A DNA stretch of 64,000 nt, taken from positions 62,001 through 126,000 of the IMG/VR virus record IMGVR_UViG_3300033141_006329. One strand, written 5' to 3'. The number at the start of each line of letters is the position of its first letter. The stretch's first letter is position 1. The translations under genes were made by a program, and so were the position numbers. Shown here one piece after another: positions 45,183 through 61,421 of the stretch. The notes under the pieces were generated by a model that was given only the letters and a program-made list of their open reading frames with translations, made no database searches and was not told the DNA's origin.

Positions 45183-45212
45183 ATAGTCCCCCTCGTTCAT
45201 TTTTAATGTTTT

Positions 45213-45222: not shown

Positions 45223-45251
45223 TTTATTCCATAAAAAGTTCCAGAGAAAAC

Positions 45252-45275
45252 CCACACCATCAAGCGGACAAATTA
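45252..45275 (+). promoter_or_regulatory. Class 1 element at the strand switch, upstream of the GT9-queC-hldE operon
   Basis: CCACACCATCAAGCGGACAAATTA. Confidence 0.7.
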
Positions 45276-45372
45276 AAAACGTGATAAATTAGAAATAATA
45301 TGTGGCATCTGGATTTTTTGATTACAAAGAGGACAAACATATAAAGAAACATTTTAAAGAAAGGGGCAAAAT

Positions 45373-46635: not shown

Positions 46636-46855
46636 GGAATTTTTAGAAAGGTTTAAAATAGAGTTTGGGGATTTTATAAGACTCGCAGAGACAGGAAAAA
46701 CAGTTCGTTATTCTGCCCTGAAAGCTAGGAAAAAATCAATTCAACTAAGAAATATGTTAAAGGATTTTAGGGGCTATTCATTAACAAACGATAAGAGGAT
46801 ATCCGAAATATTATCCGAAGCCAAAATAAAGATTAGGTCGGAGGTAACAGGCTAA
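46616..46855 (+). CDS. Histone H1-like (Hc1-type) small basic protein
   Basis: A.KARK.S..L...LK.FR..SL motif. Confidence 0.55.
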   Translation: MEETTYREFLERFKIEFGDFIRLAETGKTVRYSALKARKKSIQLRNMLKDFRGYSLTNDKRISEILSEAKIKIRSEVTG

Positions 46856-47502
46856 TGAATAAATTAAATAACAACCTAGAATATTGGGAAGGCAGGCATC
46901 ACGATATGACTAATGAGCGTATAGTGGGCCGTATCGACTGGACCCGAGCAGAATATTATAAAGAGTTAGCTAGATGGTCATCCATAATAGAACCGCTCCT
47001 ATCACAAGTACAGCTCCCACGATCATCTAACAATAGTACCGTTCTCGACATTGGTTGTGGAGTAGGCAGATGGGTTCCGCTTCTATCAAAATATTTTACA
47101 GATTATTATGGGTGTGATATCACAGATAATGCTATAGAAAAAACACGAAAAGCCGTAGCTGATACAGGACTAAACTATGTAGTTGAGAAGATAGTAGATA
47201 ATGTGTTACCCTTTAAAAATATAAAATTCGATCTAGTATGGACATGTGTAGTCCTCCAGCACATTGTTGATAAAGAATTATTAGAATACTATGCACAACA
47301 GATATCCTATGCAGTAAAGCCAGAGGGTTATTTATTAATTACAGAAAATATAGCTGAATGTAAGGATAGTCATTATATGAATTTTCGATCAGAATCTTAT
47401 TACAAAGAATTATTTACAAGTGTAGGATTCAATATAATAGATACTAAATACATAGAAGAAAGAGAACAACATGCTTCGATGCTGTTCAGGAAGGAGGCAT
47501 AA
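46855..47502 (+). CDS. Class I SAM-dependent methyltransferase
   Basis: VLDIGCGVGR, GCDI, FDLVW...VLQHI, LKPxG-like VKPEG. Confidence 0.85.
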   Translation: MNKLNNNLEYWEGRHHDMTNERIVGRIDWTRAEYYKELARWSSIIEPLLSQVQLPRSSNNSTVLDIGCGVGRWVPLLSKYFTDYYGCDITDNAIEKTRKAVADTGLNYVVEKIVDNVLPFKNIKFDLVWTCVVLQHIVDKELLEYYAQQISYAVKPEGYLLITENIAECKDSHYMNFRSESYYKELFTSVGFNIIDTKYIEEREQHASMLFRKEA

Positions 47503-47504
47503 TT

Positions 47505-48290
47505 ATGTCAAATATAGTAATATTGTTCAGTGCAGGTATTGACTCGTTTCTCACAGATGATCATTTTAAACAACGTAGAATTCCTGTTAAGAAGCTTTAT
47601 TTTGATTTGAACTCTGTTTACACATCACCAGAAAAATCTCTATTACAAAGTATATATGATGATGTAGAATACCATTCATTATTAAATGTTGCTAGTATTG
47701 AAGAAGAGAATATGAATGTACCAAATAGAAATATAATGTTAGCAACAATGGCCAAGTCTCTTTATCCTCAAACAGATGAAATATATCTAAATGAAATGAG
47801 AGACGATAGAGGGCTAGATAGTAATAAAGATTTATTCTCAATGTACTCTCATGTTCTAAGTATGAGTTCGGGTTATAAAGTAGAAATAAAAAGTCTGTTC
47901 TGGGATATTGAGAAGAGTGAGGCTATAAAACAGTATATGGAATATGGTAGAAGTAAGATATCATTGATCACACATACCTTTTCTTGTTTTGGAGATAATC
48001 TAACCCGCAGAGTTCCTGAAGTTTCTGTCTATGAATCAAGAGCAGATGATTTTGCATATGTATCAACTATACCTTTACAAGTACCAGTTTGTATGAAGTG
48101 TAAAGCCTGTTTTCGAAAAGCTTGTGCTCTGACGATGGGTAATATTTATATACCGTTTAAGAATATGAACATGGTTGACGAATATGAAGAGAATATAGGT
48201 TCTCTGGATAATTATCCTAATCGAAAAAAATCAGTGAGAAATTATATAAAATTTATGAGGCAATATGGAAAAGAAAATTTCACCCTATAG
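47505..48290 (+). CDS. queC: 7-cyano-7-deazaguanine synthase QueC-like
   Basis: LFSAGIDS PP-loop, VPNRN, K.EAI, TFSC, CMKCKAC.RK. Confidence 0.7.
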   Translation: MSNIVILFSAGIDSFLTDDHFKQRRIPVKKLYFDLNSVYTSPEKSLLQSIYDDVEYHSLLNVASIEEENMNVPNRNIMLATMAKSLYPQTDEIYLNEMRDDRGLDSNKDLFSMYSHVLSMSSGYKVEIKSLFWDIEKSEAIKQYMEYGRSKISLITHTFSCFGDNLTRRVPEVSVYESRADDFAYVSTIPLQVPVCMKCKACFRKACALTMGNIYIPFKNMNMVDEYEENIGSLDNYPNRKKSVRNYIKFMRQYGKENFTL

Positions 48291-48804
48291 GATATTTACA
48301 GAATGGCTACTAAACCCTTGCCCAGATGCTGAATTATCTGGAGATGTGATTAAAGCTATTAATCCCAGGACAGTGATATGTATGTTTGGAAAAATTGGGG
48401 GCCTCACTATATTCTTGAATGATCACTTTAATAACTTTAGTGTTATGAACTTGGATCCTTTAGAGTTTTATCAATTCCTTAAGAGTCTCGTAAAAAAATA
48501 TAAAATTAAGAAATGGGACTTTTCATATTTTCCTACAATGAAGCGAGATAAAACCATATCAGAGATCCAAATGAAACTTCCTCATCTCAAGAAAAGTGAG
48601 ATCATCTATCTATTAGAACAATGTAAGAGTGATGAGGATTATGATTCCTTCTGTGAGAGTCTGGGAATTAGAAAGAACCCTAAAATAAAGAAAATTAAAA
48701 AGAAAGGTAAAAAAAATAAAAAGCTAATCGTGTCTACCTTCGGTGATAGTATGATAAAAAATATTAGAACTATGGATGATTGGATAGATTGCTTTGGTAT
48801 GTAA
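48265..48804 (+). CDS. Hypothetical protein (possibly small clamp-loader subunit, gp62-like)
   Basis: 179 aa helical, Lys-rich tail; family assignment weak. Confidence 0.45.
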   Translation: MEKKISPYRIFTEWLLNPCPDAELSGDVIKAINPRTVICMFGKIGGLTIFLNDHFNNFSVMNLDPLEFYQFLKSLVKKYKIKKWDFSYFPTMKRDKTISEIQMKLPHLKKSEIIYLLEQCKSDEDYDSFCESLGIRKNPKIKKIKKKGKKNKKLIVSTFGDSMIKNIRTMDDWIDCFGM

Positions 48805-50261
48805 GGAGGAACAATATGAAAGACATAACTAAATATTTAGAACTATTCAAAAATAAAAGTATTCTTGTACTTGGGGATTTAATGGTTGATGAATATCAAT
48901 GGTGTAAGACTCGAAAAATTTCCCAAGAGGCTCCGGTTCCTGTTGTTAATTTATATAATACAGAATTAAGATTAGGTGGAGCAGGAAATGTCATTAATAA
49001 TATCAGAAGTTTAGGTGGGAATGTTACTGCTGTTGGTACAATTGGAAGCGATATAGAGGGCGATTGGATAATGGATGAGCTGGAAAGAATAGGGGCCGAT
49101 AGCATGGGAGTATTTGTGGATTATAATAAACCCACCATAAAGAAAACTCGAATAATTGCAGGAACCCAACAGATAGTTCGTATAGATAGAGAAGATACAA
49201 AATGCATATCTCCAGATTTAGTTGATGAAATGTTTAAGTTTATGACAGACAATATAGAAGAGTGGGATGCTATATTAATTTCAGATTATGCCAAAGGAAC
49301 TATACTTAATTACCTCGCGATAAATACAATAGGATGGGCAAATGCTAATAATAAATTGGTTATTGTAGATCCTAAAGGTAAAGATTTTTCCAGATATTTT
49401 AATGCTAGTGTTCTTACTCCTAATAGCGAGGAAGTAAAAGAGGCTTACGGGAGTGGCGATATATACAATCTTGGATATAAAATATTTAATGATTTGAAAT
49501 TGTCTCATGGATTACTTGTAACTTTGGGCAAGGATGGAGCCTGGGCATTCACTGAACATAATCAAAAAATAATAAAAACAGATGCTAAAAAAGTTGCAGA
49601 TGTTTCAGGGGCTGGTGATACAATGATAGCAGCATTAACATTAGCAATGTCTTGTGGTATGGATATTTACGATGCATCTAAATTTGCAAACATGGCTGCT
49701 GGAATTTCAGTGGGTAAATTGGGAACATCAACAGTTACTCCAGATGAAATACTAAGTAATGTAAATAGTCTTATAAGTAATGGTAAGCTGAGATCTAGAA
49801 AAGATATTATTAATACTGTTAAGGATCATAGAACAGTTGATAAAAAAATAGCTTTTACGAATGGTTGTTTCGATCTGCTACATGTGGGTCATATTAAGTT
49901 GTTAGAGGAAGCTAAATCATTCGCAGACATTCTGGTAGTGGGTATAAACTCAGATAAATCTATACGACGATTAAAGGGAAGGGATAGACCATTTGTAATA
50001 CAGGAAGAAAGAGCCAAAATTTTATCGGCATTAGAGTATGTGGATTATGTAGTAATTTTTGATGAGGATACACCATCATTATTAATAGAATCTATAAAAC
50101 CAGATATCCTAGTAAAGGGTTCTGATTATATAATAAGTGATATTGCAGGTTCCAATTTCGTAATAGAAAATGGAGGATCTGTTAAATTGGTAGAATTGTT
50201 AGAACATAAATCAACATCAAATATTATTAATTTGGTTAAGAAAGAAGGAGAAATAAGATGA
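48780..50261 (+). CDS. hldE: Bifunctional heptose-7-phosphate kinase / heptose-1-phosphate adenylyltransferase
   Basis: LGDLMVD.Y, ISQEAPVPV, GGAGNV, SDYAKG, VDPKG, TPN, DVSGAGDT; C-terminal FTNGCFDLLHVGH, VGINSD.S..RLKG..RP, STS. Confidence 0.95.
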   Translation: MDRLLWYVRRNNMKDITKYLELFKNKSILVLGDLMVDEYQWCKTRKISQEAPVPVVNLYNTELRLGGAGNVINNIRSLGGNVTAVGTIGSDIEGDWIMDELERIGADSMGVFVDYNKPTIKKTRIIAGTQQIVRIDREDTKCISPDLVDEMFKFMTDNIEEWDAILISDYAKGTILNYLAINTIGWANANNKLVIVDPKGKDFSRYFNASVLTPNSEEVKEAYGSGDIYNLGYKIFNDLKLSHGLLVTLGKDGAWAFTEHNQKIIKTDAKKVADVSGAGDTMIAALTLAMSCGMDIYDASKFANMAAGISVGKLGTSTVTPDEILSNVNSLISNGKLRSRKDIINTVKDHRTVDKKIAFTNGCFDLLHVGHIKLLEEAKSFADILVVGINSDKSIRRLKGRDRPFVIQEERAKILSALEYVDYVVIFDEDTPSLLIESIKPDILVKGSDYIISDIAGSNFVIENGGSVKLVELLEHKSTSNIINLVKKEGEIR

Positions 50262-50563
50262 AAGTATTATATTTGGATTTATATTTCAAGTTGCCCGATG
50301 ATTTTAAGGGAGGCATTAATAATGCATTAAGAGAATTGATAAAATATAGAGAATCTAAAGGATTATCAGGAGCTTTTATAACTATTGATGATACAGATTC
50401 GCCCAAAGAAGAGAAGATTATCGAAGAAGCACATACAGACATATTGTGGGAGAAATTTTTAGAAAAAACAAAAGATGACAATATTAATATTATTGGGCGT
50501 GGTAGCTGTAATCATTGGGGTGGTAAAAAGTGGATAAATTTAGATGATGAAGGAGAGGATTAA
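50258..50563 (+). CDS. Hypothetical protein
   Basis: 101 aa; ATGA overlap with hldE. Confidence 0.55.
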   Translation: MKVLYLDLYFKLPDDFKGGINNALRELIKYRESKGLSGAFITIDDTDSPKEEKIIEEAHTDILWEKFLEKTKDDNINIIGRGSCNHWGGKKWINLDDEGED

Positions 50564-50566
50564 AAA

Positions 50567-50983
50567 ATGAGAAAACAATTTTGTGTAATATGTATAATGT
50601 TAATATTATTAATAGTTACGTCGAGCATCAGTTGCGCCAAACTAAATGTAATTTCACCAGAAGTGCTAGTCAATGTATACCAAAAAAACCCTGTCAGAGG
50701 TGATTTAATTTACAGGGATAATCTTATTACTCTAAGGGCGGAGGTAGTAGGTATAAATAAACCTGCTAAAGATGTTATCTTTTTGGATATAGGTTATAGT
50801 ATATTATGTTTTTTTGATATTAAAGAAGAGTGGGCTGTATCACAATTAGAAATAGGAGATAAGATTTTGATTGAGGGATTTTTTATGGGTTGTTATAATG
50901 GTATGTTTGTCATCGAAAAATCAAAAATATTGGAAGAGGATAGTTATGAACCAGGACCAATATTAGAGAAAGAGGATTTATAG
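50567..50983 (+). CDS. Exported OB-fold (tRNA_anti-like) protein, possible lipoprotein
   Basis: Hydrophobic signal ending ISC; Y..N....D..Y....I.L...V..I; GD.I.I.G...G. Confidence 0.6.
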   Translation: MRKQFCVICIMLILLIVTSSISCAKLNVISPEVLVNVYQKNPVRGDLIYRDNLITLRAEVVGINKPAKDVIFLDIGYSILCFFDIKEEWAVSQLEIGDKILIEGFFMGCYNGMFVIEKSKILEEDSYEPGPILEKEDL

Positions 50984-50985
50984 GT

Positions 50986-51612
50986 ATGAAATTGATGTCA
51001 TATGATATAGAAATTGCAAATGAGATAAAGGACGTTCCTGGGGGATGGGGGAATAATTGGGGCATGGGATTAGGGTCTGTAATAGTTTACTCTTACGATG
51101 AGGATAAGTATTACGAATACTTACACAACGCATCACGGGACGAGATAAAAGCAAAACTAAACGGCAACAGAGTTATAACTTTCAATGGCCTCAATTTTGA
51201 CTCAAAGGTACTTCTAGGAAACAAACGAATCCTAAGTCCAGGCCCTACAGAGTTCTCAGTTACTGTTACATCTGAGGACGGGGCAACATCATGGGTAGAA
51301 TTTGATATATTCACACATTGTCTAAAAGATATTAATAGATGTCAGACCCTTCTAGAATCCACCAGAAAAAGATCTAGAGGTGGGAATAAATTAGATGACT
51401 ATGCATTGAATACATTAGGAGAAGAATTTGGGAAAACAGGTCATGGTAAGGACGCACCAATTATGTATAAAAATGGAGAATATGAGAAACTCATAGAATA
51501 TAATCGACAAGATGTACTTATAACCAAACTATTATTTGACTTCGCTAGAAAGAATGGTTATCTTATTAATGGTTATGGTAAGAGAGTTAATATACAAATG
51601 AGGAGAAGTTAG
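50986..51612 (+). CDS. RNase H-like DEDD 3'-5' exonuclease (YprB/RNase_H_2-like)
   Basis: YDIEI, TFNG..FD, FDI, KLD..A..TLG..K.G.G..A...Y..G....L..YN..DV. Confidence 0.8.
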   Translation: MKLMSYDIEIANEIKDVPGGWGNNWGMGLGSVIVYSYDEDKYYEYLHNASRDEIKAKLNGNRVITFNGLNFDSKVLLGNKRILSPGPTEFSVTVTSEDGATSWVEFDIFTHCLKDINRCQTLLESTRKRSRGGNKLDDYALNTLGEEFGKTGHGKDAPIMYKNGEYEKLIEYNRQDVLITKLLFDFARKNGYLINGYGKRVNIQMRRS

Positions 51613-51629
51613 ATAGCATCATCAAAAAC

Positions 51630-51653
51630 CCACCACAACAACTGGACAAATTA
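51630..51653 (+). promoter_or_regulatory. Class 1 element
   Basis: CCACCACAACAACTGGACAAATTA. Confidence 0.7.
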
Positions 51654-51685
51654 AAAACAATTAAAGCATATAGGAGGACTAAATT

Positions 51686-51874
51686 ATGACAGTATATGAA
51701 GAAGCTATTGTTAAATCTCGGGTAGAAACTGCCGAAAATAGAATACGTGCTATTCATAATGAAAGGGAATCACAAAAGATTTTTGGTAAAAAGAATTATC
51801 TGTCTTATGATAGTAAAAATTTTATAAATATGATTAATTTGTTTAGAAATAAGTTTAAAGATATATCTATATAA
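51686..51874 (+). CDS. Small hypothetical protein
   Basis: 62 aa; GGAGG RBS behind the 51630 motif. Confidence 0.5.
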   Translation: MTVYEEAIVKSRVETAENRIRAIHNERESQKIFGKKNYLSYDSKNFINMINLFRNKFKDISI

Positions 51875-51878
51875 AAAT

Positions 51879-51902
51879 CCGGCCTAGTAACTGGACAAAC
51901 TA
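51879..51902 (+). promoter_or_regulatory. Class 1 element upstream of ASCH/polB
   Basis: CCGGCCTAGTAACTGGACAAACTA. Confidence 0.7.
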
Positions 51903-51932
51903 AAAACATAAATCATATAGGAGGGGATAAAA

Positions 51933-52250
51933 ATGAATAGAGCAATGCAAGCTATTTTAATAGCAGGAACAAAAATGAAAGAAGATGTTTTATATGGGAG
52001 AAAGAAAATAACCATTAGAGAAGGTCATAAAGACTATACTGGGGGCCCAGTACTGATAGGATGTGATTTACTAAATTGGGCTACGCGGAAAAAAATAATT
52101 AGTGTGAGATATACCACAGTAGGTGAAGTTACAAATAAGGAGTGCATGGATGATGGAATTGGTGCTAATTTAAATTTAATGATAGAGCTTCAAAAATATT
52201 ATCCAAATCTCACAATGGATTCACCTGTAACTGTAATTAGGTGGGAATAG
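51933..52250 (+). CDS. ASCH-domain protein
   Basis: G.K.ITIR.G, V....V.EVT..E...DG, VTVI.W. Confidence 0.7.
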   Translation: MNRAMQAILIAGTKMKEDVLYGRKKITIREGHKDYTGGPVLIGCDLLNWATRKKIISVRYTTVGEVTNKECMDDGIGANLNLMIELQKYYPNLTMDSPVTVIRWE

Positions 52251-52254
52251 CCCA

Positions 52255-53040
52255 GTGAATGAAAAAGAATCCATAGATATTATCCTAGAAAAATCTAAAG
52301 TAATACAAGATGTCCTGAATAATGAATTAATAACCCAGTTTGCTAAGTTACATAATATACCAGACAAATATAATAAATTCTATATGAAGCAAGAGATTGT
52401 AGCGAAACGAGGATATTTTCTAGATGTTAAAAAGAAGTATGCACTATGGATAGTTAATAAGGAAGGAGTTCCTGTCAATGAATATGAAATAAAAGGACTA
52501 GTAACAAGACGTTCTGATTATCCAAGACTGACCAAAGAGAGACTAGTCACTATATTTGATCTATTATTAAAACATGATAAAATCTCATTCAAAAAAATAT
52601 CAGAGTATATAAAAGAGACCGAATTTGAAATAAGAGATCGTATAGCTAAAGGTGATAAATCAATAGCTAAACCTGTATCATATTCTAAAGATATTGCCCA
52701 ATATAAAAAATTACCAGAACAGATTATAGGTATGGAATTATGGAATACATTAGAGTACAAACACTTTGTTGTGGGCACTAAGGGTTATAGATTCAGAATT
52801 AAAGGTGTAGATACTTATACTGCACCAGAGAAAATCAAAAGAAAACTAAATAAAATAAAAGATGTTAAATGGATAGTATTACCTTATGACGAAGAGAAGC
52901 TGCCAGATTATTACGTTATAGATATCGATGCCATGTTGGAATTTGCTTGGACTAAAAGAGTAGATGAGTTACTCAAGCCTATAATTAGTAGGGTTAGTAA
53001 AAGAGAGAAATTTAAAAATAAAAAATTGACAACGTTTTAG
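52255..53040 (+). CDS. Family B DNA polymerase, C-terminal subunit (palm remainder plus thumb)
   Basis: KQEIV..RG.F..KKKYA, EIKGL..RRSD; GTG start. Confidence 0.85.
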   Translation: MNEKESIDIILEKSKVIQDVLNNELITQFAKLHNIPDKYNKFYMKQEIVAKRGYFLDVKKKYALWIVNKEGVPVNEYEIKGLVTRRSDYPRLTKERLVTIFDLLLKHDKISFKKISEYIKETEFEIRDRIAKGDKSIAKPVSYSKDIAQYKKLPEQIIGMELWNTLEYKHFVVGTKGYRFRIKGVDTYTAPEKIKRKLNKIKDVKWIVLPYDEEKLPDYYVIDIDAMLEFAWTKRVDELLKPIISRVSKREKFKNKKLTTF

Positions 53041-53048
53041 GGGGTTAT

Positions 53049-55577
53049 ATGAAGACATCAAAATTTAGCAACTGCACTAGTTGCCCACTACTAAATCAGA
53101 TTATGGTTCACGGCGAAACAAATGTACCACATGATCTAAGTTTAGTTAAATTATTGATATTAGCAGAAGCCCCTGCTACAAAGGAAGTTGAGTTAGGGTT
53201 ACCTTTAAAGGGTAAAGCCGGTAAAGGATTTCGCAGTAGATTTGAGTCGTCATGTTTGGATACCGTTCCTTATTTTATAAACAATGTAGTCATGTGTGCA
53301 AATCTATATAAAGATCCAGTAACAGGTCGAATTAAAACAGATAATCCACCCTCAGAAGCCGTTGATTGTTGTAAGCCGAATTGGGAAGCATTAGTTAAAA
53401 TTCTACAGCCAGAATATATATTGATAATGGGAGGAACAACTCAAGAAGTATTTGGTATAACAGGAACTATATCAGATTCGAGAGGAAAACTATACCCATA
53501 CCCTGGTGATACTTCAGGAATGAAAACCATACCAAAAGTTTTTCTAACATTCCATCCATCATATATAACTAGAGGAACTGCTCCTAAACATAAGATAGAA
53601 CAATTCAATGAAGATTTCGATACATTATATGAAATGATAACCGGAATCTCAGAGAAACAAGAAAAGAAAAAGACCCAGCGAGCAAAACTAAGTATGACTA
53701 AGCCCTATACATATTCACTACCAAAATGGATCAGAGAAGATGATGTATCTTTGATAGATATACAAAAACACCCAAAGTCAAACACCATTGTATATATATT
53801 CAGAGATAAAGATAATAATAGAAAATACCACACAGATAAATCGGGCGAATATTATTACTATAGAACTGAGGGTAAATTAGGAGATTCACCTGTACTAATA
53901 CCTGTATCTGAAACTGAACTCGTACTGAATAAACCTATATATAATAAACATGAAGCACGATATGAATCTGATAATAAACTGGCACATAAACACTCTATAG
54001 ACTATTACATACAAAGAAAAAATCCTGAAATAAATATACCACTGGTAAAACTATTTTTCGATATAGAAATATATAGTGGTGGATCTTTAGAATTTCCAGA
54101 TCCTAAAGTTGGACCGAAACCTATAAATGCTATATCATTTAAGATAGGAGAAAATCCTGTAAATGTATATTTAGTAAATCCTACAAACCTAATAAAAAAA
54201 GAAGACGTATATAATATAGAAGATAAATTAAAGGATATTAGAACAGATTTTGAAGTTAGTATATTTGATACGGAGAAAAAGTTATTAGAAGCATTTTGCA
54301 AATTAATAAAGACATCAGAACCAGACCTATTAATGACTTGGAATGGTACAGGATTTGATATTCCCTATATTTATAATAGATTAAAAAAGAATTCTATAGA
54401 TCCATCATCTATGTCGCCGTTAGGTTGTACACATATTAATGTACATAGATTTGGAGATATTACTATAATGGGTACCTACCATTTGGATATGTTAGAAGCA
54501 TATAAAGATTTGACAGAAAATAAAAAAGAAACCTATGCTTTGGGTGCAATAGCTGTTGATGAATTGGGAGAAGGAAAAGTAGAATTTGAAGGATCATTGG
54601 ATTTAATATATGAAAAAGATATAGAAAGATTTATCAAATATAGTGGACAAGATACTAATCTATTATATGAGTTAGATGTGAAGAAGGGACATGCCGATTT
54701 AAAAAATGAGTTAAGAAGGGTATGTTCTAGCAATTGGAAAGGAACGGAATCTACAACAGGATTATTGGATCCTTTAGTTATATCGTATGCAAAAAATAAA
54801 GGGATGGTTATTAGAAATTCTGAAATGCATAAATCAAATGAGAAACTTAAGGGTGCATATGTGAAAGTTCCGAACCCTGGTATATATAAATGGTTAGTAG
54901 ATTTTGATTATAGCTCCCTCTATCCTAGTACTATTATATCCTTAAATATAGGTCCAGATACACTCATAGGTAAAATAGATCCTGAGATTGCCAAACATTA
55001 TATATATGGTCGTAAAATTCCTGATAAAGTTGAAGTGAATATAACCCCTATGAATACCTATGATTCAAGGTTTAAAACTATGACTAAAGATGAATTTATA
55101 AAATGGGTAGAGTACAACAATGCTATAGTGAGTATAGTAGGTACAATATTTATGGGCCATGATAAGAAAATTTCATTTATGTCTGAGATTTGTTCATTGT
55201 TATTAGGTACTAGGGCAAAATTAAAAGATAAGATGAACAAAGCAAAGGAAGAGAATGATCCTATATGGAAATTGTTTTATAACCAGCAATGGGCGTATAA
55301 AATTCTTGCCAACTCTCTATATGGAGTTTTGGGTACCTTTTCATTCAGATTATTTAAGTTGGATTTAGCTAAAACTATTACAGGGACAGCACAAGAGGCT
55401 TTGAAGTTTGCTATGCACCATACATCAAAGTATATGAAGACAGGGGAGAAAACTGTAGATTTGGATTATATTGATGGGGATTTTGATAGGGATATACCTT
55501 ACGTAATATACGGAGATACAGATAGTAATTTTATAAATATTGCAGAATATCTTATTAATCAAAATATTAATATATAA
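53049..55577 (+). CDS. polB: Family-4 UDG-like domain fused to family B DNA polymerase (exonuclease plus palm motifs A-C), lacking the C-terminus
   Basis: C..CPL, AEAP, G.AG, NVV.C, FHPSY (UDG4); FDIE, WNG..FDIPY, Y.L..., Y...D (exo); DYSSLYPS, KILANSLYG, YGDTDS, then stop 16 aa later. Confidence 0.9.
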   Translation: MKTSKFSNCTSCPLLNQIMVHGETNVPHDLSLVKLLILAEAPATKEVELGLPLKGKAGKGFRSRFESSCLDTVPYFINNVVMCANLYKDPVTGRIKTDNPPSEAVDCCKPNWEALVKILQPEYILIMGGTTQEVFGITGTISDSRGKLYPYPGDTSGMKTIPKVFLTFHPSYITRGTAPKHKIEQFNEDFDTLYEMITGISEKQEKKKTQRAKLSMTKPYTYSLPKWIREDDVSLIDIQKHPKSNTIVYIFRDKDNNRKYHTDKSGEYYYYRTEGKLGDSPVLIPVSETELVLNKPIYNKHEARYESDNKLAHKHSIDYYIQRKNPEINIPLVKLFFDIEIYSGGSLEFPDPKVGPKPINAISFKIGENPVNVYLVNPTNLIKKEDVYNIEDKLKDIRTDFEVSIFDTEKKLLEAFCKLIKTSEPDLLMTWNGTGFDIPYIYNRLKKNSIDPSSMSPLGCTHINVHRFGDITIMGTYHLDMLEAYKDLTENKKETYALGAIAVDELGEGKVEFEGSLDLIYEKDIERFIKYSGQDTNLLYELDVKKGHADLKNELRRVCSSNWKGTESTTGLLDPLVISYAKNKGMVIRNSEMHKSNEKLKGAYVKVPNPGIYKWLVDFDYSSLYPSTIISLNIGPDTLIGKIDPEIAKHYIYGRKIPDKVEVNITPMNTYDSRFKTMTKDEFIKWVEYNNAIVSIVGTIFMGHDKKISFMSEICSLLLGTRAKLKDKMNKAKEENDPIWKLFYNQQWAYKILANSLYGVLGTFSFRLFKLDLAKTITGTAQEALKFAMHHTSKYMKTGEKTVDLDYIDGDFDRDIPYVIYGDTDSNFINIAEYLINQNINI

Positions 55578-55591
55578 TCAATGAGAATAAT

Positions 55592-55615
55592 CCACACGTG
55601 TGAGTGGACAAATTA
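55592..55615 (+). promoter_or_regulatory. Class 1 element upstream of queE-TGT-helicase operon
   Basis: CCACACGTGTGAGTGGACAAATTA. Confidence 0.7.
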
Positions 55616-55639
55616 GAAACAATAAGAGGAGGGAATATC

Positions 55640-55876
55640 ATGTTTAGGGTTATTTATGTTGATATGGACATGAGAGAAAAAACAGATTTAAACATGGCGG
55701 AATCAGAACAAGGCGAACATCATGTGCCACATGTACAAGACTATATTATATTGCAAAAATCTGACTATCATGTAAGATATATGGTTAGAGAAGTTGTACG
55801 TGTATATGAGGGGGTAAAACAAACAGTATATGTAAAATTAATAGATGACAAAGTACATCCTGGAAAATTTGAATAA
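55640..55876 (+). CDS. Hypothetical protein
   Basis: Start moved to MFRVIY (GGAGG RBS). Confidence 0.6.
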   Translation: MFRVIYVDMDMREKTDLNMAESEQGEHHVPHVQDYIILQKSDYHVRYMVREVVRVYEGVKQTVYVKLIDDKVHPGKFE

Positions 55877-55892
55877 TAAGGAGGGATTAACC

Positions 55893-56639
55893 ATGACTAG
55901 AGTAGTAGAACATTTTGAATCTATACAAGGAGAAGGACCATATGCAGGAACACCTTCTTACTTTATACGATTGTCTGGATGCATTTTAAAGTGTCCGTTC
56001 TGTGATTCAAAATTCGCATGGAGTAAAGACGCAGGCGAACCTTTAAAAGATATAAATATAAATATACCTGAACAGTATGAACATATTGTAGTATCTGGAG
56101 GAGAACCGTTTATACATATGGGTGATCCAGAGTTTATATCACTTATGCAAAAATATGGTAAAACAAAAAGAATATCATTTGAGACTACTGCTATACAATC
56201 CTTAGATCAATTTCCATCAAGTATCATTATTACTATATATAAATCATTGCGAAAACTCAAATTCCCTGTAGATTTTAAACACCCAGCATATATCATATCT
56301 CCAAAACTTGGAAAAGAATCGTATCCAAAAGGTATTAGCGAAAACGATATATTTATCCATTACCAATTAGAACAAGAATATTCAGATATAACCAAGAAAA
56401 ATGTATTTTATAAAATTATATTTGAGGAATCTAAATATAGTATAATAAAAGCATTTATCAACCAAATTCCATCATGGTTTTTAGACAATGTGTATATAAT
56501 GCCAATGACACCTATACCATACAATCATGATGAGTACATAAAAAATTGTAAATCAACAGTAGAATTTTGTAAAGAAATAGGAATTAGATATACGCCTAGA
56601 ATTCACATAGATATCTATGGTGTCAGACAAGGCGTTTAG
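55893..56639 (+). CDS. queE: 7-carboxy-7-deazaguanine synthase QueE (radical SAM)
   Basis: F.SIQGEG...G.P..FIRL.GC.L.C.FCDS, VVSGGEP, ET, SPK, MP, PR.H. Confidence 0.85.
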   Translation: MTRVVEHFESIQGEGPYAGTPSYFIRLSGCILKCPFCDSKFAWSKDAGEPLKDININIPEQYEHIVVSGGEPFIHMGDPEFISLMQKYGKTKRISFETTAIQSLDQFPSSIIITIYKSLRKLKFPVDFKHPAYIISPKLGKESYPKGISENDIFIHYQLEQEYSDITKKNVFYKIIFEESKYSIIKAFINQIPSWFLDNVYIMPMTPIPYNHDEYIKNCKSTVEFCKEIGIRYTPRIHIDIYGVRQGV

Positions 56640-56648
56640 GAGGAAAAA

Positions 56649-58034
56649 TTGAAAAAATCAGGATTTGTAGCAGCCGGGCTACCCGCGTTACGGCAGCATT
56701 TAAATTGTATACTAAAGCATAACCCAGAGCATTTCACCGAGAAAGCTCTGAACGATTTCTTATTAGAGAATTGTAACAAATTTCTAACCAGCATCGGTAT
56801 AAGTATCGATAAAAAGAAGCCAGATGATATGGCAATATTTAAGAGGTATCAACGAAAATTTGATAGCTTTAAGAATACTGGATTTTTGAATAATTGTGAT
56901 ATAATGATTGATTCCGCAGGGTTTCAATTTCAAATTGGGGTATTGCCAAAAAGTTTTGTCCCTAAATTTATTGATGGTTATCACGATTTTCTTATAAATA
57001 ATTATGGGAGATATTCTCAAGCTTTTGTATTCGATCCAGTTCCAGGTGCTACTAAATCCATTATAGATTCCTACAAAGAAATGAAAGATTTAAATATGAT
57101 GTCTTATCAAAAAGCCGCCAATTTACCCGCCCATGTAAAGAGGTCTATGATGTATATACATCACTTCCGTACTCCAAAGATAAATAAATTATTTAAGGAA
57201 ATGTTATTTGAACATAATTTAGCAGATGGTTTTGGTAGCTTTGCAACAGGAGGATTGGTTTCCTTTCTATCTAGTTCTCAGGGAAATCCTCCCTGTAATA
57301 TGTATGTTATCCCACTCATAGATATATTAACATATGCTCTTAAAAATGGTCTAAAATCGCTCAGATTTCACGTTCTAGGCGATAGTGATTGGAAGTCGGT
57401 ATTATTCCATAAGTTCATAGAAAGACACGTTAAAGAAGTACATGACATCGATATAGAGGTGACATACGATAGTACAACAATACAAAAAACATTTATGATG
57501 GGTAGGTATTTATTTGTTCCATCTTATAAAGATAAATCTATATGGAAAATGTTTCTTAAATCAGATGGTCTACACATGAGATGGAAAGATGAGGGAAGTG
57601 TTTTAGATTATTACTATAAATTAATGGGAAATATATCTGATGAATATGGATTTAAAAAATTGAATCCACAAGATGATCCCATTTATATAAATAATGGTAT
57701 AAAGACTCATAGAGTAGCATATGCTTTTGCCATATTACATGTATTAAAATTGTTTAGAGTCTGTAGTGAATGGTGTGAGGATTATGTAGATCAATTATAT
57801 CCCCTCTATCAGAATGGACAAATTACAAAGTTTGATACTGAAGTAGAAAATATAATGTTAAAGTTTAACAATGGGAAGTTATCAAACGCCATAAGCGGTA
57901 GAACATCTGCGACATACAATTCATTAAAAATGATAGAAAATTTAGATATAGATTATTGTAATTATCTAGTGGATAGATATATGTCGATAGATGAGGCTGC
58001 GTCACTAAAAAATTATAAAGAGTCCACATTTTAG
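56649..58034 (+). CDS. Divergent TGT-fold protein, DpdA-like (candidate DNA deazaguanine transglycosylase)
   Basis: IDSAGFQ (cf. TGT DSGG(F/Y)Q), FD, YIHH, ATGGLV, FHVLG, YDSTT in TGT order; between queE and helicase. Confidence 0.6.
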   Translation: MKKSGFVAAGLPALRQHLNCILKHNPEHFTEKALNDFLLENCNKFLTSIGISIDKKKPDDMAIFKRYQRKFDSFKNTGFLNNCDIMIDSAGFQFQIGVLPKSFVPKFIDGYHDFLINNYGRYSQAFVFDPVPGATKSIIDSYKEMKDLNMMSYQKAANLPAHVKRSMMYIHHFRTPKINKLFKEMLFEHNLADGFGSFATGGLVSFLSSSQGNPPCNMYVIPLIDILTYALKNGLKSLRFHVLGDSDWKSVLFHKFIERHVKEVHDIDIEVTYDSTTIQKTFMMGRYLFVPSYKDKSIWKMFLKSDGLHMRWKDEGSVLDYYYKLMGNISDEYGFKKLNPQDDPIYINNGIKTHRVAYAFAILHVLKLFRVCSEWCEDYVDQLYPLYQNGQITKFDTEVENIMLKFNNGKLSNAISGRTSATYNSLKMIENLDIDYCNYLVDRYMSIDEAASLKNYKESTF

Positions 58035-58045
58035 GAGGTGATTTT

Positions 58046-59542
58046 TTGATCGGAGAGTTTTTTATAGATACTTGTATATCGTTAGGTTGTTCTGTAAACG
58101 ATGATGATGCTAAGTTACTAGAGGTTATACAATCCATATTATCCTGGCATAAGAAAGAAACACAAAAGGATGATGTGCCTATAGAATTTTTAGATAAGGT
58201 TGAATTGGCAAATTATCTAATAAACTACCGTATGAATAATAAACCATTTGATTTTAAAAGTATGGTTTACGGGTTGAAAAATGGAAAGTTAAAAAACCTT
58301 ATTCCTATAGTAGAGAATAGTAAGACAGAGATTGCAGAGGAAGAGTTGGAAAAGATCAGTAGTTTCATATATTCTAAGAAGAAATTATGCGATATGATCA
58401 CAGGCAGAAATAACATCCAAGAATTATTAACAGATGTAGAAACAGGGAATTATATAGATGATGATGAGATATGTGAAAGATGGGAACATCAAATAACGAA
58501 TAGTTATACTCAAATAACAGAGATAAATAGAATAGAGGCTGTTAAGGATGTTGCTTCTTTGGATTTATTAAACGATGAATACGATGAAGTTGAAAGATCA
58601 ATACGAGAGAGATATTCATCTAAGAATGTAATAAAAACAGGATATAAATCAGTGGATAATCTTTTACCAGCAAAGGGATTTGAGAGAGGTCGATTGTATG
58701 TTATTGGCGGTACTTCAGGTATAGGGAAATCTAACTTCATGATTAATCTAATTGTAAATGCAATAAGTCAAGGAGATCCAGATCCAGATGCTATTTATTT
58801 ATATTTAACAGGAGAGAATTTAATAGGAGAGTCCTTAGAGAGGACATATTGTTGTTTCACCAGAACTCCTCATAAAAATATGGTTGATAGTATTTTAAAT
58901 GATCCCACATTCTCACTAAAAAAAGAAATAACAAACATCCTGACAAGTAAATCCTCTAATATTCATATGAAATATATAAAGCCTGATATAACAACATCCT
59001 TTGATGTTGCAGCATTAATAGCCGATGTCAATTCAAAAGGAAATCTAAAAGCTGTATATTTAGACTATTTAGATCTGACATGTAGTGGTTATAAAATAGA
59101 TGATATTAGATTAGATATAGGTCGAGCATGTAGAGCATATAAAAACCTTGCAGTTGATTATAAAATACCATTCATAACAGCTACTCAGCTTAATAGAAGT
59201 GGGTATGATAAAGAGCTAGAACCTAGTCTGATATCTATGAGCGAATCTATGAAAAAAGTTCATGACTCTGATTTTGTATTATTCTTACAACCACCAACCG
59301 AGTCAGTAATGTCAATACCATTTAACGGATCTACAAAATCTTTTAAGAAGGTAAAAATGACAGTTTTAAAAAATCGCAACGGGGAAGTTGGTGCATCTAC
59401 TAATATAGTTAGTAACATACGACTGGGTGATAAGAAGATTTTTGATTATTCAATGGAAGAAGAACCTGAAACCAGAATTGATATTGTAGACACAAATATA
59501 GTGGACGAAAATTATGATGAATATACTAATAATGTTTGGTAA
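58046..59542 (+). CDS. Replicative DnaB-like helicase (T4 gp41-like)
   Basis: GGTSGIGKS Walker A, GE, LDYLD, TATQLNR.G, SES, K.R.G. Confidence 0.9.
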   Translation: MIGEFFIDTCISLGCSVNDDDAKLLEVIQSILSWHKKETQKDDVPIEFLDKVELANYLINYRMNNKPFDFKSMVYGLKNGKLKNLIPIVENSKTEIAEEELEKISSFIYSKKKLCDMITGRNNIQELLTDVETGNYIDDDEICERWEHQITNSYTQITEINRIEAVKDVASLDLLNDEYDEVERSIRERYSSKNVIKTGYKSVDNLLPAKGFERGRLYVIGGTSGIGKSNFMINLIVNAISQGDPDPDAIYLYLTGENLIGESLERTYCCFTRTPHKNMVDSILNDPTFSLKKEITNILTSKSSNIHMKYIKPDITTSFDVAALIADVNSKGNLKAVYLDYLDLTCSGYKIDDIRLDIGRACRAYKNLAVDYKIPFITATQLNRSGYDKELEPSLISMSESMKKVHDSDFVLFLQPPTESVMSIPFNGSTKSFKKVKMTVLKNRNGEVGASTNIVSNIRLGDKKIFDYSMEEEPETRIDIVDTNIVDENYDEYTNNVW

Positions 59543-59564
59543 TTTCTGTGATGAAAATTAGAAA

Positions 59565-59574
59565 GGACAAATTT
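59565..59574 (+). promoter_or_regulatory. Class 2 variant upstream of acidic protein
   Basis: GGACAAATTT. Confidence 0.4.
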
Positions 59575-59634
59575 AAAAGAGAGCGATAATTAGGTAATTC
59601 CTAAAGGGTATATAAAAGAAAAAAGGAGAAAGAA

Positions 59635-60162
59635 ATGAGTAACGATAAGGATTATATTAAGTTTTTAGAAGAATCTGTTGCAGTACAGAAATATAAGGCA
59701 CCCTGTGATAAGGTAGTTAATTGGAAGGGTGAAGGAAAATTAAATTCAAGTCTCGATGGAGATATTGATTATTTAGTTAAGAAAATTACTAAGGGTGATA
59801 AACCCGAAGATAAAGCTATTCAATCAGAATCTAAAACTGGGAGTGATTCTCCCTTATCTATATTAGAGAAAGAATTAGATGAAGCAGATGAAGAATTAGA
59901 TGCTAAAGATATAGAAAAAGATCTCGAAAAAGATATGGAAGCTGATAAGGACATAGCTGAAGAAGGTTGTAAAGGCATAGACGAAACCATAGATTTATCC
60001 AATGTTGAGAGTGATATATTATCTAGGCTTATTTCTGAAATGGATGCTATGGATAGTTTTGAAGATGAAGACATGATTGATACAGGAATGGGTGATGATT
60101 ATGTTGACGATGAATTAGATACGGAGGCGTTACCCGCTGAGGATGATTATCTGGGTATCTAA
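59635..60162 (+). CDS. Highly acidic protein (possible prohead core/scaffold component)
   Basis: 175 aa, D/E-rich; near the portal. Confidence 0.55.
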   Translation: MSNDKDYIKFLEESVAVQKYKAPCDKVVNWKGEGKLNSSLDGDIDYLVKKITKGDKPEDKAIQSESKTGSDSPLSILEKELDEADEELDAKDIEKDLEKDMEADKDIAEEGCKGIDETIDLSNVESDILSRLISEMDAMDSFEDEDMIDTGMGDDYVDDELDTEALPAEDDYLGI

Positions 60163-60194
60163 TATACGCCTCGTGCAGAGGCATTTCGCTACCG

Positions 60195-60231
60195 AAAAGG
60201 GTTCGTCATTTTACAACGACGGGCCCTTTTT
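60195..60231 (+). terminator. Rho-independent (possibly bidirectional) terminator
   Basis: AAAAGGGTTCGTC-N10-GACGGGCCCTTTTT; extra hairpin GCCTC-GTGCA-GAGGC at 60168..60182. Confidence 0.75.
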
Positions 60232-60261
60232 AATTATAATTCAACAGGAAGGGGCTAAAAA

Positions 60262-60519
60262 ATGTTAGAAGTATTTTTGAAGGATCCGGGAATAATTTTT
60301 ACGAAGAACAACGGAAAGGTTGTCAGAACACCGATCAAATTTTATATAAAGGAATCCGAGAAACTTTTATATGAATCAATGATAAGGGCAAGTTCCATAA
60401 ATAATTTTGAGATAACTGAGATAGATGAGGTTCCCAATAAATCAAAAGGGAATGTTCCAAATCTATCGAAAATTAAACCAAAATCAGACATCAATCTAGA
60501 ATTTAAAGTGAAGGGTTAA
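60262..60519 (+). CDS. Hypothetical protein
   Basis: 85 aa, GGAAGGGG RBS. Confidence 0.55.
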   Translation: MLEVFLKDPGIIFTKNNGKVVRTPIKFYIKESEKLLYESMIRASSINNFEITEIDEVPNKSKGNVPNLSKIKPKSDINLEFKVKG

Positions 60520-60523
60520 TCAT

Positions 60524-60994
60524 ATGTATAAATTCATATTCTATTTGAAGGATAATAAAAACATTGTGATAACCTCTAAAACTAATAATACATCTATAAA
60601 AGATTATGTTGATAAAATAGCAGATATCATGGTAGGTACCGAGTTAACAAAGTTCGAAACAGAAACAGATGTCCTTATGTTAAAACCCTTAGATTTAATG
60701 GGTGTACATATAGTATTAGATACAAAGTCCGAATCATCTTTCACTCCTATTGATTATTCAGAGGGTATAATAGACGAACCAAATCTACAAGCCGTAATAC
60801 CTGATATAGACTTGAGTGATGTAGGTGTTGATGTGGAAAAAGAAGCAGAAGAAACTTTAGATGAGTTTGCCGACACTATAGACAAAATTGTAGAGACAAA
60901 AATAGAACCAGAAGTAGAAGTTGAAGCAAATGAAGAGGAAATAAAAGAAGATCCTGCAGAAGAGGAGGAGACAGATGATAATACTTCTGATTAA
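60524..60994 (+). CDS. Hypothetical protein with acidic tail
   Basis: 156-aa ORF. Confidence 0.55.
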   Translation: MYKFIFYLKDNKNIVITSKTNNTSIKDYVDKIADIMVGTELTKFETETDVLMLKPLDLMGVHIVLDTKSESSFTPIDYSEGIIDEPNLQAVIPDIDLSDVGVDVEKEAEETLDEFADTIDKIVETKIEPEVEVEANEEEIKEDPAEEEETDDNTSD

Positions 60995-61421
60995 TGCCTG
61001 GTTACTTCTGTTCTTTATTATGTTATATACGGTATTGGATCGTAATATCAAATTAAAAAATAGGACGGATGTATTTGACCGATATGGAGAACTTTTGGTA
61101 ATAATGGATAGATCGAAAGAGTTAGCATATCAGAAAGTTTTTCAGGATCATGTATTGACCTATTCTTTTTCAGGATTTAAAGTGAACAAGGAAGAACTGG
61201 ATTTATTTCAATCAATATATATAAAGACTCTTTTTACATTCTGTGGTCCAAAGGTGATAGAAGATTTGAAAATATTACATGGGGATATAGATTCTGTTTG
61301 TGCAATACTTGTAAATGATTTTATTCAAAGGATAAAGCAAGATGAAACGAATATAACAGGCAGGATGTTAGAGGCTGAAAAAAATAAAGAAGAGGAAGGA
61401 GGCGTAACGAATAATGGCTAG
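60975..61421 (+). CDS. Hypothetical membrane protein
   Basis: N-terminal hydrophobic helix. Confidence 0.6.
   Translation: MIILLINAWLLLFFIMLYTVLDRNIKLKNRTDVFDRYGELLVIMDRSKELAYQKVFQDHVLTYSFSGFKVNKEELDLFQSIYIKTLFTFCGPKVIEDLKILHGDIDSVCAILVNDFIQRIKQDETNITGRMLEAEKNKEEEGGVTNNG

What the first reader, a model, noticed from the sequence alone, without database searches (positions are those of the whole stretch)
52255..55577. Family B polymerase split into two genes in reversed order
Seen: the large gene stops 16 aa after YGDTDS (..INQNINI*). The rest (KQEIV..KKKYA..KGL..R.D and thumb) is encoded by the gene immediately upstream. By comparison with RB69 gp43 spacing, the halves join with almost nothing missing. 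There are no intein or intron signatures. The DNA just after the stop (ATGAGAATAATCCA) weakly resembles the start of the C-part (ATGAAAAAGAATCCA), possibly a duplication scar. Established: gp43A/gp43B splits in some T4-like phages and the split Methanothermobacter PolB are known; C-before-N order is unusual to my knowledge.
Basis: partly seen in the sequence, partly recalled or inferred. Interest (0 to 1): 0.65.

Follow-up and report, generated by a model that had tools for sequence, protein, structure and literature searches.

The report
Phage DNA polymerase split, halves swapped
A large uncultivated phage encodes its only DNA polymerase as two adjacent genes with the tail-end piece placed first. 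The layout is real, conserved in a whole clade of related phages, and most likely gives a working two-subunit enzyme; it is a new variant of the already known split polymerases.

Summary
ORF 53049..55577 (842 aa) carries a uracil-DNA glycosylase domain, the PolB exonuclease, and the palm and fingers, and stops 16 aa after YGDTDS. The gene 8 nt upstream (52255..53040, 261 aa) carries the KKKY motif and the thumb.

It is not an assembly error or a pseudogene:
- The C-before-N order recurs in 24 distinct metagenomic loci, down to about 42% identity.
- A separately assembled strain shows pN/pS of 0.02 (C-part) and 0.11 (N-part).
- No intein, intron or leftover copy is present.
- This is the only polymerase found in the 223-kb record.
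- A complex model with controls supports binding (0.78; best control 0.01).

The same clade also holds the same break in normal gene order (3 lineages) and unsplit genes (2 lineages). Trees lean towards the swapped order being the older state, but this is not proven (AU p 0.07–0.19).

Split PolBs are already known (T4-like 43A/43B, PhiKZ gp82/gp50), so this is a new variant of moderate interest.

The parts
52240..52246 (+). Shine-Dalgarno-like GGTGGGA, 8 nt before the GTG start of the C-part
   Evidence: The 99%-identical strain L088 has AGGAGGGG at the same place before the same GTG.
52255..53040 (+). polB-C: 261-aa subunit carrying the last part of the palm (KQE, KKKY) and the thumb; GTG start, TAG stop
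   Evidence: phrog_262 positions 604-767. There are 63 clusters of stand-alone homologues of about 260 aa. Invariant residues are K45, E47, K59, K60, Y62, G81 and R86. The profile matches RB69 gp43 residues 699-813. pN/pS is 0.02 against L088.
52429..52440 (+). KKKY (K59-Y62), the KxY motif of family B polymerases
   Evidence: aligned to KKRY of RB69.
53041..53048 (+). 8-nt spacer with a GGGG ribosome-binding stretch between the two genes. No terminator-like site on the + strand was reported anywhere in the scanned stretch 50500..56700.
53049..55577 (+). polB-N: 842-aa subunit made of UDG, N-terminal domain, 3'-5' exonuclease, palm (motifs A and C) and fingers (motif B); ATG start, TAA stop
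   Evidence: About 44 clusters of homologues end at the same profile position. The profile matches RB69 gp43 residues 105-629. pN/pS is 0.11 against L088.
53145..53618 (+). Uracil-DNA glycosylase domain (aa 33-190); four invariant cysteines (C9, C12, C83, C108), AEAP and HPS motifs
   Evidence: PF03167 at 61.5 bits against a cut-off of 24.3; invariant columns.
54018..54545 (+). PolB 3'-5' exonuclease domain (aa 324-499); D338/E340, D437 and Y531/D535 are invariant
   Evidence: PF03104.
54777..55568 (+). Polymerase domain up to motif C (aa 577-840); motif A D618/D620, motif B K751..G759
   Evidence: PF00136 profile positions 19-245 of 453.
55509..55526 (+). Motif C, YGDTDS (Y821-S826)
55527..55577 (+). 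16-residue tail (NFINIAEYLINQNINI) and TAA stop: the break point. It corresponds to about RB69 residues 640-646, inside the palm.
   Evidence: A tail of the form ..YL.DK.L(I/L), in a few lineages with substitutions at the D or K (the window itself has YLINQNINI), is shared by most split relatives, swapped or in normal order, and by the in-clade unsplit genes; L005 and L107 end a few residues earlier.

Best explanation
The phage's replicative family B DNA polymerase is made as two polypeptides from one operon.

The first cistron gives a 261-aa subunit holding the KxY strand of the palm and the thumb. The second gives an 842-aa subunit holding a Fe-S type uracil-DNA glycosylase domain, the N-terminal domain, the proofreading exonuclease, palm motifs A and C, and the fingers. 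The two associate non-covalently, and the palm beta-sheet is completed across the subunit interface. The result is a heterodimer equivalent to a single-chain PolB such as RB69 gp43.

The break sits in a surface linker about 16 residues after motif C. The gene order C-then-N is an inherited feature of a clade of large uncultivated phages. It is a rearrangement of two already independent cistrons, not a circularly permuted protein.

Shown here: the anatomy, the conservation, purifying selection, and the lack of any rejoining signal. Inferred: physical association (modelled only), enzyme activity, and how the order came to be swapped.
For: Anatomy:
- One PolB profile is covered by the two ORFs without gap or overlap.
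- The join is seamless against unsplit L013.
- All catalytic motifs are invariant across 31 homologues of each part.

Conservation:
- 63 clusters of stand-alone C-parts and about 44 of N-parts all end at the same profile position.
- The order is C then N on one strand in 31 loci, 24 of them distinct. In 18 of those 24 the N frame opens within 50 nt of the C-part stop.

Selection, against strain L088, which differs at about 0.21-0.24 of synonymous sites:
- C-part: 37 synonymous and 3 non-synonymous differences.
- N-part: 109 synonymous and 45 non-synonymous differences.

Only polymerase:
- There is one PF00136 locus and no PF00476 in the 223-kb record.

Binding model:
- ipSAE was 0.78 in each of three runs; the best of three controls was 0.01.
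- The mark was reached by 58 of 80 solved complexes and 2 of 110 mismatched pairs (counts rough, since my own alignments were used).
- The runs agree in at least 96% of contacts, and partner pLDDT is 82-83.
- The interface joins N-part residues 605-633 and 784-842 to C-part residues 5-64. These are the motif A and motif C strands against the KQE..KKKY strand.

Precedent:
- The split PolBs of Aeromonas phage 25 co-purify and are active (PMC2988022).
- PhiKZ gp82 and gp50 form a stable, active 1:1 complex (PMC13648687).
Against: - No biochemical or expression data exist for this phage. No public run holds the sequence, so neither reads nor RNA could be laid on it.
- The complex model may score high simply because it recalls the intramolecular PolB fold. 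It shows compatibility, not binding.
- The record is only about 71% complete, so a second polymerase elsewhere cannot be excluded.
Confidence: 0.85

Rival explanations
1. Assembly artefact: a contiguous polB was mis-joined so that its 3' end appears upstream.
For: The window comes from a metagenomic assembly, and no read set was available to check the junctions directly.
Against: The same order and the same junctions occur in a separately assembled strain from another run (L088). They also occur in 24 distinct loci from viral, metagenome and other assemblies at 42-62% identity. Each ORF has its own ribosome-binding site, start and stop.
Confidence: 0.01
2. Decay or neofunctionalisation: the polymerase is broken. 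Either one piece is a dying fragment, or the pieces work separately, for example the large piece as a UDG/exonuclease repair enzyme and the small one as a DNA-binding factor.
For: Fragments of polymerases are sometimes retained for other roles. A separate exonuclease-like gene (50986..51612) lies nearby.
Against: Both pieces are under strong purifying selection. Every polymerase motif stays invariant in both pieces over deep divergence. The pieces always co-occur, and their trees agree. No other polymerase is present in the record. The modelled interface is large and specific.
Confidence: 0.05
3. Covalent rejoining: the halves are joined into one chain by protein trans-splicing (split intein), by RNA back-splicing into a circular mRNA, or by a ribosomal event.
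For: Related phages do carry inteins in this gene, and one lineage has what looks like a split intein exactly at YGD|TDS (L022/L024).
Against: There are no spare residues at either terminus: N tail plus C head come to 60 residues, as in unsplit L013. There is no Cys/Ser...HN intein signature at the break. No Rfam intron or other RNA family reached threshold in 51000..57000. The spacer between the genes ranges from a few nt to 2.4 kb, and in L008 it holds a gene on the opposite strand. The stop and start codons and ribosome-binding sites are conserved.
Confidence: 0.03
4. On origin only: the swapped order arose by tandem duplication of polB (or of an already split N+C pair) followed by loss of the outer pieces, and a scar of this is still visible.
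For: Duplication followed by loss is the textbook route to permuted orders. The same break occurs in normal order in L089, L110 and L106 and unsplit in L013 and L090, all in the same clade, so intermediates of some kind existed.
Against: The proposed scar is at chance level, and no protein-level remnant of a second copy lies in either flank. None of 172 surveyed loci shows a C-N-C or N-C-N intermediate. The route itself stays possible; only the visible evidence for it is absent.
Confidence: 0.3

Closest known systems
gp43A + gp43B of T4-related Aeromonas phages 25 and 44RR (Petrov, Ratnayaka & Karam 2010, as summarised in PMC2988022)
   Same: A phage family B replicase encoded by two cistrons whose products co-purify and are active. 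There is no intein.
   Different: There the order is N then C, separated by an untranslated spacer or a seg homing-endonuclease gene.

In my survey, colinear splits of this general type (L048, L129, L130, L145, L168 and others) break before motif C, and their C-piece carries the Y.DTDS motif. In the window the break is 16 aa after motif C, the order is C then N, and a UDG domain is fused. I could not read the exact break site in phages 25 and 44RR.
PhiKZ DNAP-N (gp82) + DNAP-C (gp50) (PMC13648687)
   Same: A two-subunit PolB shown by cryo-EM to be a stable 1:1 complex with polymerase and exonuclease activity. The two halves are separate genes.
   Different: In PhiKZ the break lies in a large palm insertion between motifs A and C, so the two catalytic aspartates sit on different subunits. 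The two genes are numbered gp50 and gp82, not as neighbours, and the enzyme belongs to the divergent chimallivirus PolB clade. In the window both aspartates are on the N-part, the genes are 8 nt apart, and the sequence is closest to T4/RB69-type PolB.
Split PolB of Methanothermobacter thermautotrophicus (PolB1/PolB2) and split-intein PolB of Nanoarchaeum equitans (from my own knowledge; not checked here)
   Same: Family B polymerases encoded as two genes that reconstitute one enzyme.
   Different: These are archaeal chromosomal genes at separate loci. The N. equitans halves are joined covalently by a split intein, which is absent here. An arrangement that looks like a split intein does occur in distant relatives of the window (L022/L024).
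RB69 gp43 (PDB 1IG9, 1CLQ and others)
   Same: The best solved homologue. The N-part profile aligns to residues 105-629 (E 1e-67) and the C-part profile to residues 699-813. All motifs are present.
   Different: RB69 gp43 is a single chain of 903 aa with no UDG domain.
UDG-PolA fusions of SP15/YerA41-like phages (PMC13697223) and the exo/pol split of T7-like cyanophage PolA (PMC10201439)
   Same: Phage replicases that fuse a uracil glycosylase to the polymerase, or that split one polymerase gene into two interacting products.
   Different: Those are family A polymerases, and the PolA split separates whole domains in normal order.

Membership tests
Family B DNA polymerase (Pfam PF03104 + PF00136) | Exo I-III motifs, polymerase motifs A (DxxSLYPS), B (KxxxNSxYG) and C (YGDTDS), and the KxY motif | tested here: met
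   Pfam and PHROG hits. Invariant residues are D338/E340, D437, Y531/D535, D618/D620/Y625/P626, K751/N755/S756/G759 and D823/T824/D825 in the N-part, and K59/K60/Y62 in the C-part. The full set is reached only by the two ORFs together.
Family B DNA polymerase (Pfam PF03104 + PF00136) | Single polypeptide holding palm, fingers and thumb | tested here: not met
   There are two ORFs in different frames, each with its own start and stop.
T4-type colinear split (gp43A/gp43B) | N-piece gene upstream of C-piece gene | tested here: not met
   The C-part (52255..53040) precedes the N-part (53049..55577).
T4-type colinear split (gp43A/gp43B) | Position of the break | tested here: inconclusive
   N-part aa 730-833 match positions 22-114 of phrog_1918, whose later positions match the C-part. 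Colinear splits in surveyed T4-like loci break before motif C. I did not read the phage 25 or 44RR genes themselves.
PhiKZ-type split PolB | Break between motif A and motif C, within a palm insertion; catalytic aspartates on different subunits | tested here: not met
   Both motif A and motif C lie on the N-part. The PhiKZ description is from PMC13648687.
Split-intein polymerase (protein trans-splicing) | An N-intein fragment at the C-terminus of the first extein and a C-intein fragment ending in HN, followed by Cys/Ser/Thr | tested here: not met
   The N tail is 16 aa and the C head 44 aa before KQE, 60 in all, the same as unsplit L013. No intein Pfam hit was found. For contrast, L022 shows ..VHN|TDS.
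Circularly permuted protein (one chain) | One open reading frame running from the C-terminal segment into the N-terminal segment | tested here: not met
   A TAG stop is followed by 8 nt and a change of frame. The C-part frame meets a TGA right after the TAG. Spacers in relatives reach 2.4 kb.
Family 4-type uracil-DNA glycosylase (PF03167) | UDG fold, four cysteines for a 4Fe-4S cluster, and motifs A (GE.PG-like) and B (HPS) | tested here: met
   PF03167 scores 61.5 bits against a cut-off of 24.3. C9, C12, C83 and C108 are invariant, and E40-A41-P42 and H169-P170-S171 nearly so. Motif A reads AEAPA rather than GE.PG. Activity was not tested.

The most novel reading that the evidence does not exclude
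In this clade the swapped (C-then-N) split is the ancestral state. The relatives with the same break in normal order, and those with an unsplit gene, are secondary. If so, a fissioned and reordered essential gene was put back in order and re-fused, at least twice.

The clade would then offer natural orthologues in all three states (fused, split colinear, split swapped). That would allow a direct test of whether cistron order matters for assembling a split enzyme.
Probability: 0.3. Interest if true: 0.65.

Novelty: new variant of a known kind. Interest (0 to 1): 0.5.

Why it matters
Split family B replicases are known, and two have been shown to work as heterodimers. This case adds three things:
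- a new break point, just after motif C, with the palm completed across subunits;
- an adjacent reversed gene order kept stable over deep divergence in a clade of large, otherwise unannotated phages;
- close relatives that carry the same break in normal order or not at all.

That trio is a natural experiment on gene fission, fusion and operon order for an essential enzyme. It also matters for annotation: pipelines will call a truncated polymerase plus a hypothetical protein. Most of the C-parts have no Pfam hit on record.

The N-terminal Fe-S type UDG fused to PolB is widespread in these metagenomic phages. It parallels the recently characterised UDG-PolA fusions, which points to coupled uracil surveillance during replication of DNA that is probably modified with 7-deazaguanine.

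Tried and rejected
- **Read-level junction check.** The only public run found holds 17% of the sampled words. When laid, it gave fragments of 18-35 nt from unrelated contigs. This neither supports nor refutes anything; independent assemblies were used instead.
- **Single-sequence scan of viral contigs.** It found nothing. The alignment-based scan found 170 relatives.
- **Duplication scar and remnant copies.** Local alignment of the 150 nt after the N-part stop against the C-part start scored 15, against a shuffle mean of 18. No HMM remnant of either part lies in the flanks. Rejected.
- **Intron or ribozyme.** Nothing relevant in Rfam.
- **Promoters and terminators.** Promoter-like sites were at shuffle level, and no + strand terminator-like site was reported anywhere in the scanned stretch 50500..56700, so none lies between the genes.
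- **Host or taxon.** Large ORFs of the window have no PHROG match except the portal. The genome-contig scan returned four MAG contigs with inconsistent labels. Host not assigned.
- **Polarity of the state changes.**
  - The tree of polB (N+C concatenated) puts the fused and colinear group inside the swapped lineages (90/96), but the AU test does not reject one origin of the swapped order (p 0.19).
  - Neighbour genes (QueE + the 461-aa protein + DnaB) give the same topology (88/87).
  - All five proteins together give 95/95, but AU p is 0.0675, and the key lineage L005 has a long branch and odd composition. Left open.
- **Technical failures.** The first complex-prediction run failed as busy, and the first tree run timed out; both were repeated.
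- **Not used.** I did not run the large representative protein search or any alternative genetic code, because nothing called for them.
Full report
**What is in the window**

The window is part of a 223,370-bp IMG/VR virus record (bases 62001-126000), about 71% complete by CheckV. On the + strand, ORF 52255..53040 (261 aa) is followed after 8 nt, in a different frame, by ORF 53049..55577 (842 aa).

The large ORF has three Pfam domains:
- a uracil-DNA glycosylase domain (PF03167, aa 33-190);
- the PolB exonuclease domain (PF03104, aa 324-499);
- the first half of the PolB polymerase domain (PF00136, profile positions 19-245 of 453, aa 577-840).

It ends 16 residues after YGDTDS with a TAA. The small ORF has no Pfam hit. 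It matches positions 604-767 of the phage polymerase family phrog_262, and the large ORF matches positions 18-589 of the same profile.

Two details need correcting. The small gene starts at GTG 52255, preceded by GGTGGGA.

**The break is seamless and lies inside the palm**

The closest unsplit relative, L013 (1111 aa), reads YGDTDSIFVNIYDYLYSKNLIA-KDDPDIVEKVL.. across the place where the window has ..YLINQNINI-stop and MNEKESIDIILEK... The distance from DTDS to the KQE motif is 60 residues in L013, and 16 + 44 = 60 in the window.

Against solved structures, the N-part profile aligns to RB69 gp43 residues 105-629 and the C-part profile to residues 699-813. This puts the break near RB69 residues 640-646. 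The two catalytic aspartates (motifs A and C) and motif B are on the large subunit. The KKKY strand and the thumb are on the small one.

**It is real and conserved**

- A word-index search with the small protein found 63 clusters of stand-alone proteins of about 260 aa, at 45-99% identity.
- A search with the polymerase part of the large protein found about 44 clusters that all end within 0-12 residues of the same profile position. More distant homologues (33-39% identity) are unsplit UDG-PolB proteins of 1020-1100 aa.
- I fetched 172 loci from viral contigs, metagenome contigs and other assemblies and classified them with HMMs of the two parts. C-then-N on the same strand was found in 31 loci, 24 of them distinct after removing duplicates.
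- In 18 of those 24 the N frame opens within 50 nt of the C stop. In six, the spacer is 0.1-2.4 kb and holds small unrelated ORFs. These include an HNH-like ORF in L012 and an opposite-strand ORF in L008.
- A strain assembled from a different run (L088) has 99% protein identity in the C-part but differs at about 0.21-0.24 of synonymous sites. It has the same layout and the same 8-nt spacer, but a different upstream gene.
- Between the two strains the C-part has 37 synonymous and 3 non-synonymous differences (pN/pS 0.02). The N-part has 109 and 45 (pN/pS 0.11).
- All exonuclease and polymerase motifs are invariant in alignments of 31 homologues of each part.
- The record has a single PolB locus and no PolA.

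Misassembly and pseudogene decay are therefore excluded. The only run found holds trivial fragments.

**No rejoining signal**

- Neither terminus has spare residues for intein fragments.
- No intron or other RNA family reached threshold.
- Reading through the TAG of the small gene meets a TGA three codons later.
- The spacer length varies widely among relatives.

So the product is two polypeptides.

**Do the two polypeptides bind?**

A complex prediction was run with residues 240-842 of the large protein and the whole small protein, each with its alignment.
- It scored ipSAE 0.78 in all three runs; the best of three controls scored 0.01.
- The mark was reached by 58 of 80 solved complexes and by 2 of 110 mismatched pairs. 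These counts hold only roughly, because my own alignments were used.
- The runs agree in at least 96% of contacts, and partner pLDDT is 82-83.
- The contacts pair N-part residues 605-633 (motif A strands) and 784-842 (around motif C and the tail) with C-part residues 5-64 (N-terminal helices and the KQE..KKKY strand). This is the palm sheet of a normal PolB, formed between chains.

The model may be recalling the single-chain fold, so it shows compatibility rather than binding. Experimental precedent exists. The split gp43 of Aeromonas phage 25 co-purifies and is active (PMC2988022). PhiKZ gp82 and gp50 form a stable, active 1:1 complex (PMC13648687).

**The "duplication scar"**

The short similarity after the stop scores below the mean of shuffled sequences; 95% of shuffles score as high or higher. 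No protein-level remnant of either part lies in the flanks. None of the 172 loci shows a C-N-C or N-C-N intermediate.

**Evolution within the clade**

In a tree of the polymerase region, all proteins that end at this break, plus three unsplit ones, form one clade (SH-aLRT 99). Inside it I found the same break in normal order:
- L089/L101, where the N stop overlaps the C start as ATGA;
- L110;
- L106.

I also found two unsplit genes, L013/P0092 and L090/P0100.

A tail of the form ..YL.DK.L(I/L) precedes the break in most lineages of all three states. A few carry substitutions at the D or K (the window itself has YLINQNINI), and L005 and L107 end a few residues earlier. The DTDS-KQE spacing is mostly 60-65 in the clade, against 54-56 in unsplit outgroups. 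So the break is homologous across states.

Three trees bear on which state came first:
- **polB, N+C concatenated.** The fused and colinear group (100/98) sits among swapped lineages (90/96), apart from the window's own subclade (100/99).
- **Neighbouring genes** (QueE-like, the conserved 461-aa protein, DnaB). The same topology, 88/87.
- **All five proteins together.** 95/95.

This favours the swapped order as ancestral, with later return to normal order and re-fusion. It is not proven:
- AU tests do not reject a single clade of swapped lineages (p 0.19 and 0.0675).
- The key lineage L005 has a long branch, unusual composition and a shorter N tail.

I leave the polarity open. How the order was swapped is unknown. 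Duplication of an already split pair followed by loss of the outer copies is plausible, but no trace of it is visible.

**Comparison with what is known**

The enzyme is a family B polymerase by every motif, but only as the sum of two genes. It differs from three known split forms:
- **T4-type 43A/43B.** That arrangement is in normal order, with a spacer or a seg gene. Colinear splits of that general type in my survey break before motif C.
- **PhiKZ.** The break there is between motifs A and C in a palm insertion, and the two genes are numbered gp82 and gp50, not as neighbours.
- **Split-intein polymerases.**

I found no paper describing an adjacent C-before-N PolB in six full-text searches. 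No close relative is in the collection of deposited phage genomes. I rate it a new variant of a known kind.

- Read laying was given 4201 letters.
- No alternative genetic code was used.
- The two domains were searched separately because of the length window of the protein search.
- The large representative search was not used.

Noticed in passing
window 53145..53618; relatives P0111-P0183, L013, L014, L016-L020, L025: A UDG domain with four invariant cysteines is fused to the N-terminus of PolB. The fusion is widespread: well over half of the roughly 70 listed clusters of unsplit 1020-1135-aa proteins carry PF03167, and the rest show no UDG Pfam hit. In more distant clades the UDG is a separate gene directly upstream of polB (L128, L140, L145, L162, L167, L168, L170). 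I found literature only on UDG-PolA fusions.
   Followed up: partly
L022, L024, L120, L124 (relatives): polB in normal order is interrupted exactly at YGD|TDS. The N ORF carries about 116 extra C-terminal residues, and the C ORF starts with about 66 residues ending ..VHN before TDS. The two are 1.4-1.5 kb apart. It looks like a split intein.
   Followed up: partly
P0077, P0081, P0099, P0103, L108 (relatives of the N-part): N-parts of 1220-1290 aa carry an intein (PF14890) but still end at the same break. So inteins and the fission coexist in this gene.
   Followed up: no
L010/L015; L048, L129, L130, L138, L139, L145, L149, L168, L170; L141/L144: There are other, independent fragmentations of polB in uncultivated phages. 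Some are colinear splits 20-55 positions before the end of the N profile (before motif C), with either overlapping ORFs or 0.4-1.1 kb inserts. L141/L144 are split in the fingers region.
   Followed up: partly
window 45373..50261 and 55845..58034: The replication module is interleaved with genes for a GT9 heptosyltransferase-like protein, a SAM methyltransferase, a QueC-like protein, bifunctional HldE (ADP-heptose synthesis), a QueE-like radical SAM protein and a conserved 461-aa protein with no family hit. The 461-aa protein lies between QueE and DnaB in most relatives whose flank was read (absent in L091). Together these suggest a 7-deazaguanine, possibly sugar-bearing, DNA modification.
   Followed up: partly
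window 51933..52250: The ASCH-domain gene directly upstream of the C-part is absent in the closely related strain L088, where a different sequence precedes the same GTG start.
   Followed up: partly
L012 and relatives P0098, P0102, P0106, P0107, P0109: This subclade with the swapped order has N-parts lacking a recognisable UDG domain. L012 has 2.4 kb of small ORFs, including an HNH-like 326-aa ORF, between the C and N genes.
   Followed up: no
L001 (LR756508.1, 484-kb uncultured phage): Its polB has an intein in the N ORF. The gene is interrupted by about 3 kb holding four ORFs, and the C ORF begins with another intein-like segment ending ..VVHN before TDS.
   Followed up: no
window 55590..55609: An inverted repeat (TCCACACGTGTGAGTGGA) lies 13 nt after the N-part stop. 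The scan lists it only as a minus-strand terminator-like site.
   Followed up: no
window 1..64000: GC skew changes sign near 44-45 kb, where the long ORFs (200 aa and over) on the minus strand give way to long ORFs on the plus strand. Nine of the ten large ORFs scanned against PHROGs have no informative match; the exception is a portal protein at 61414..63387.
   Followed up: no
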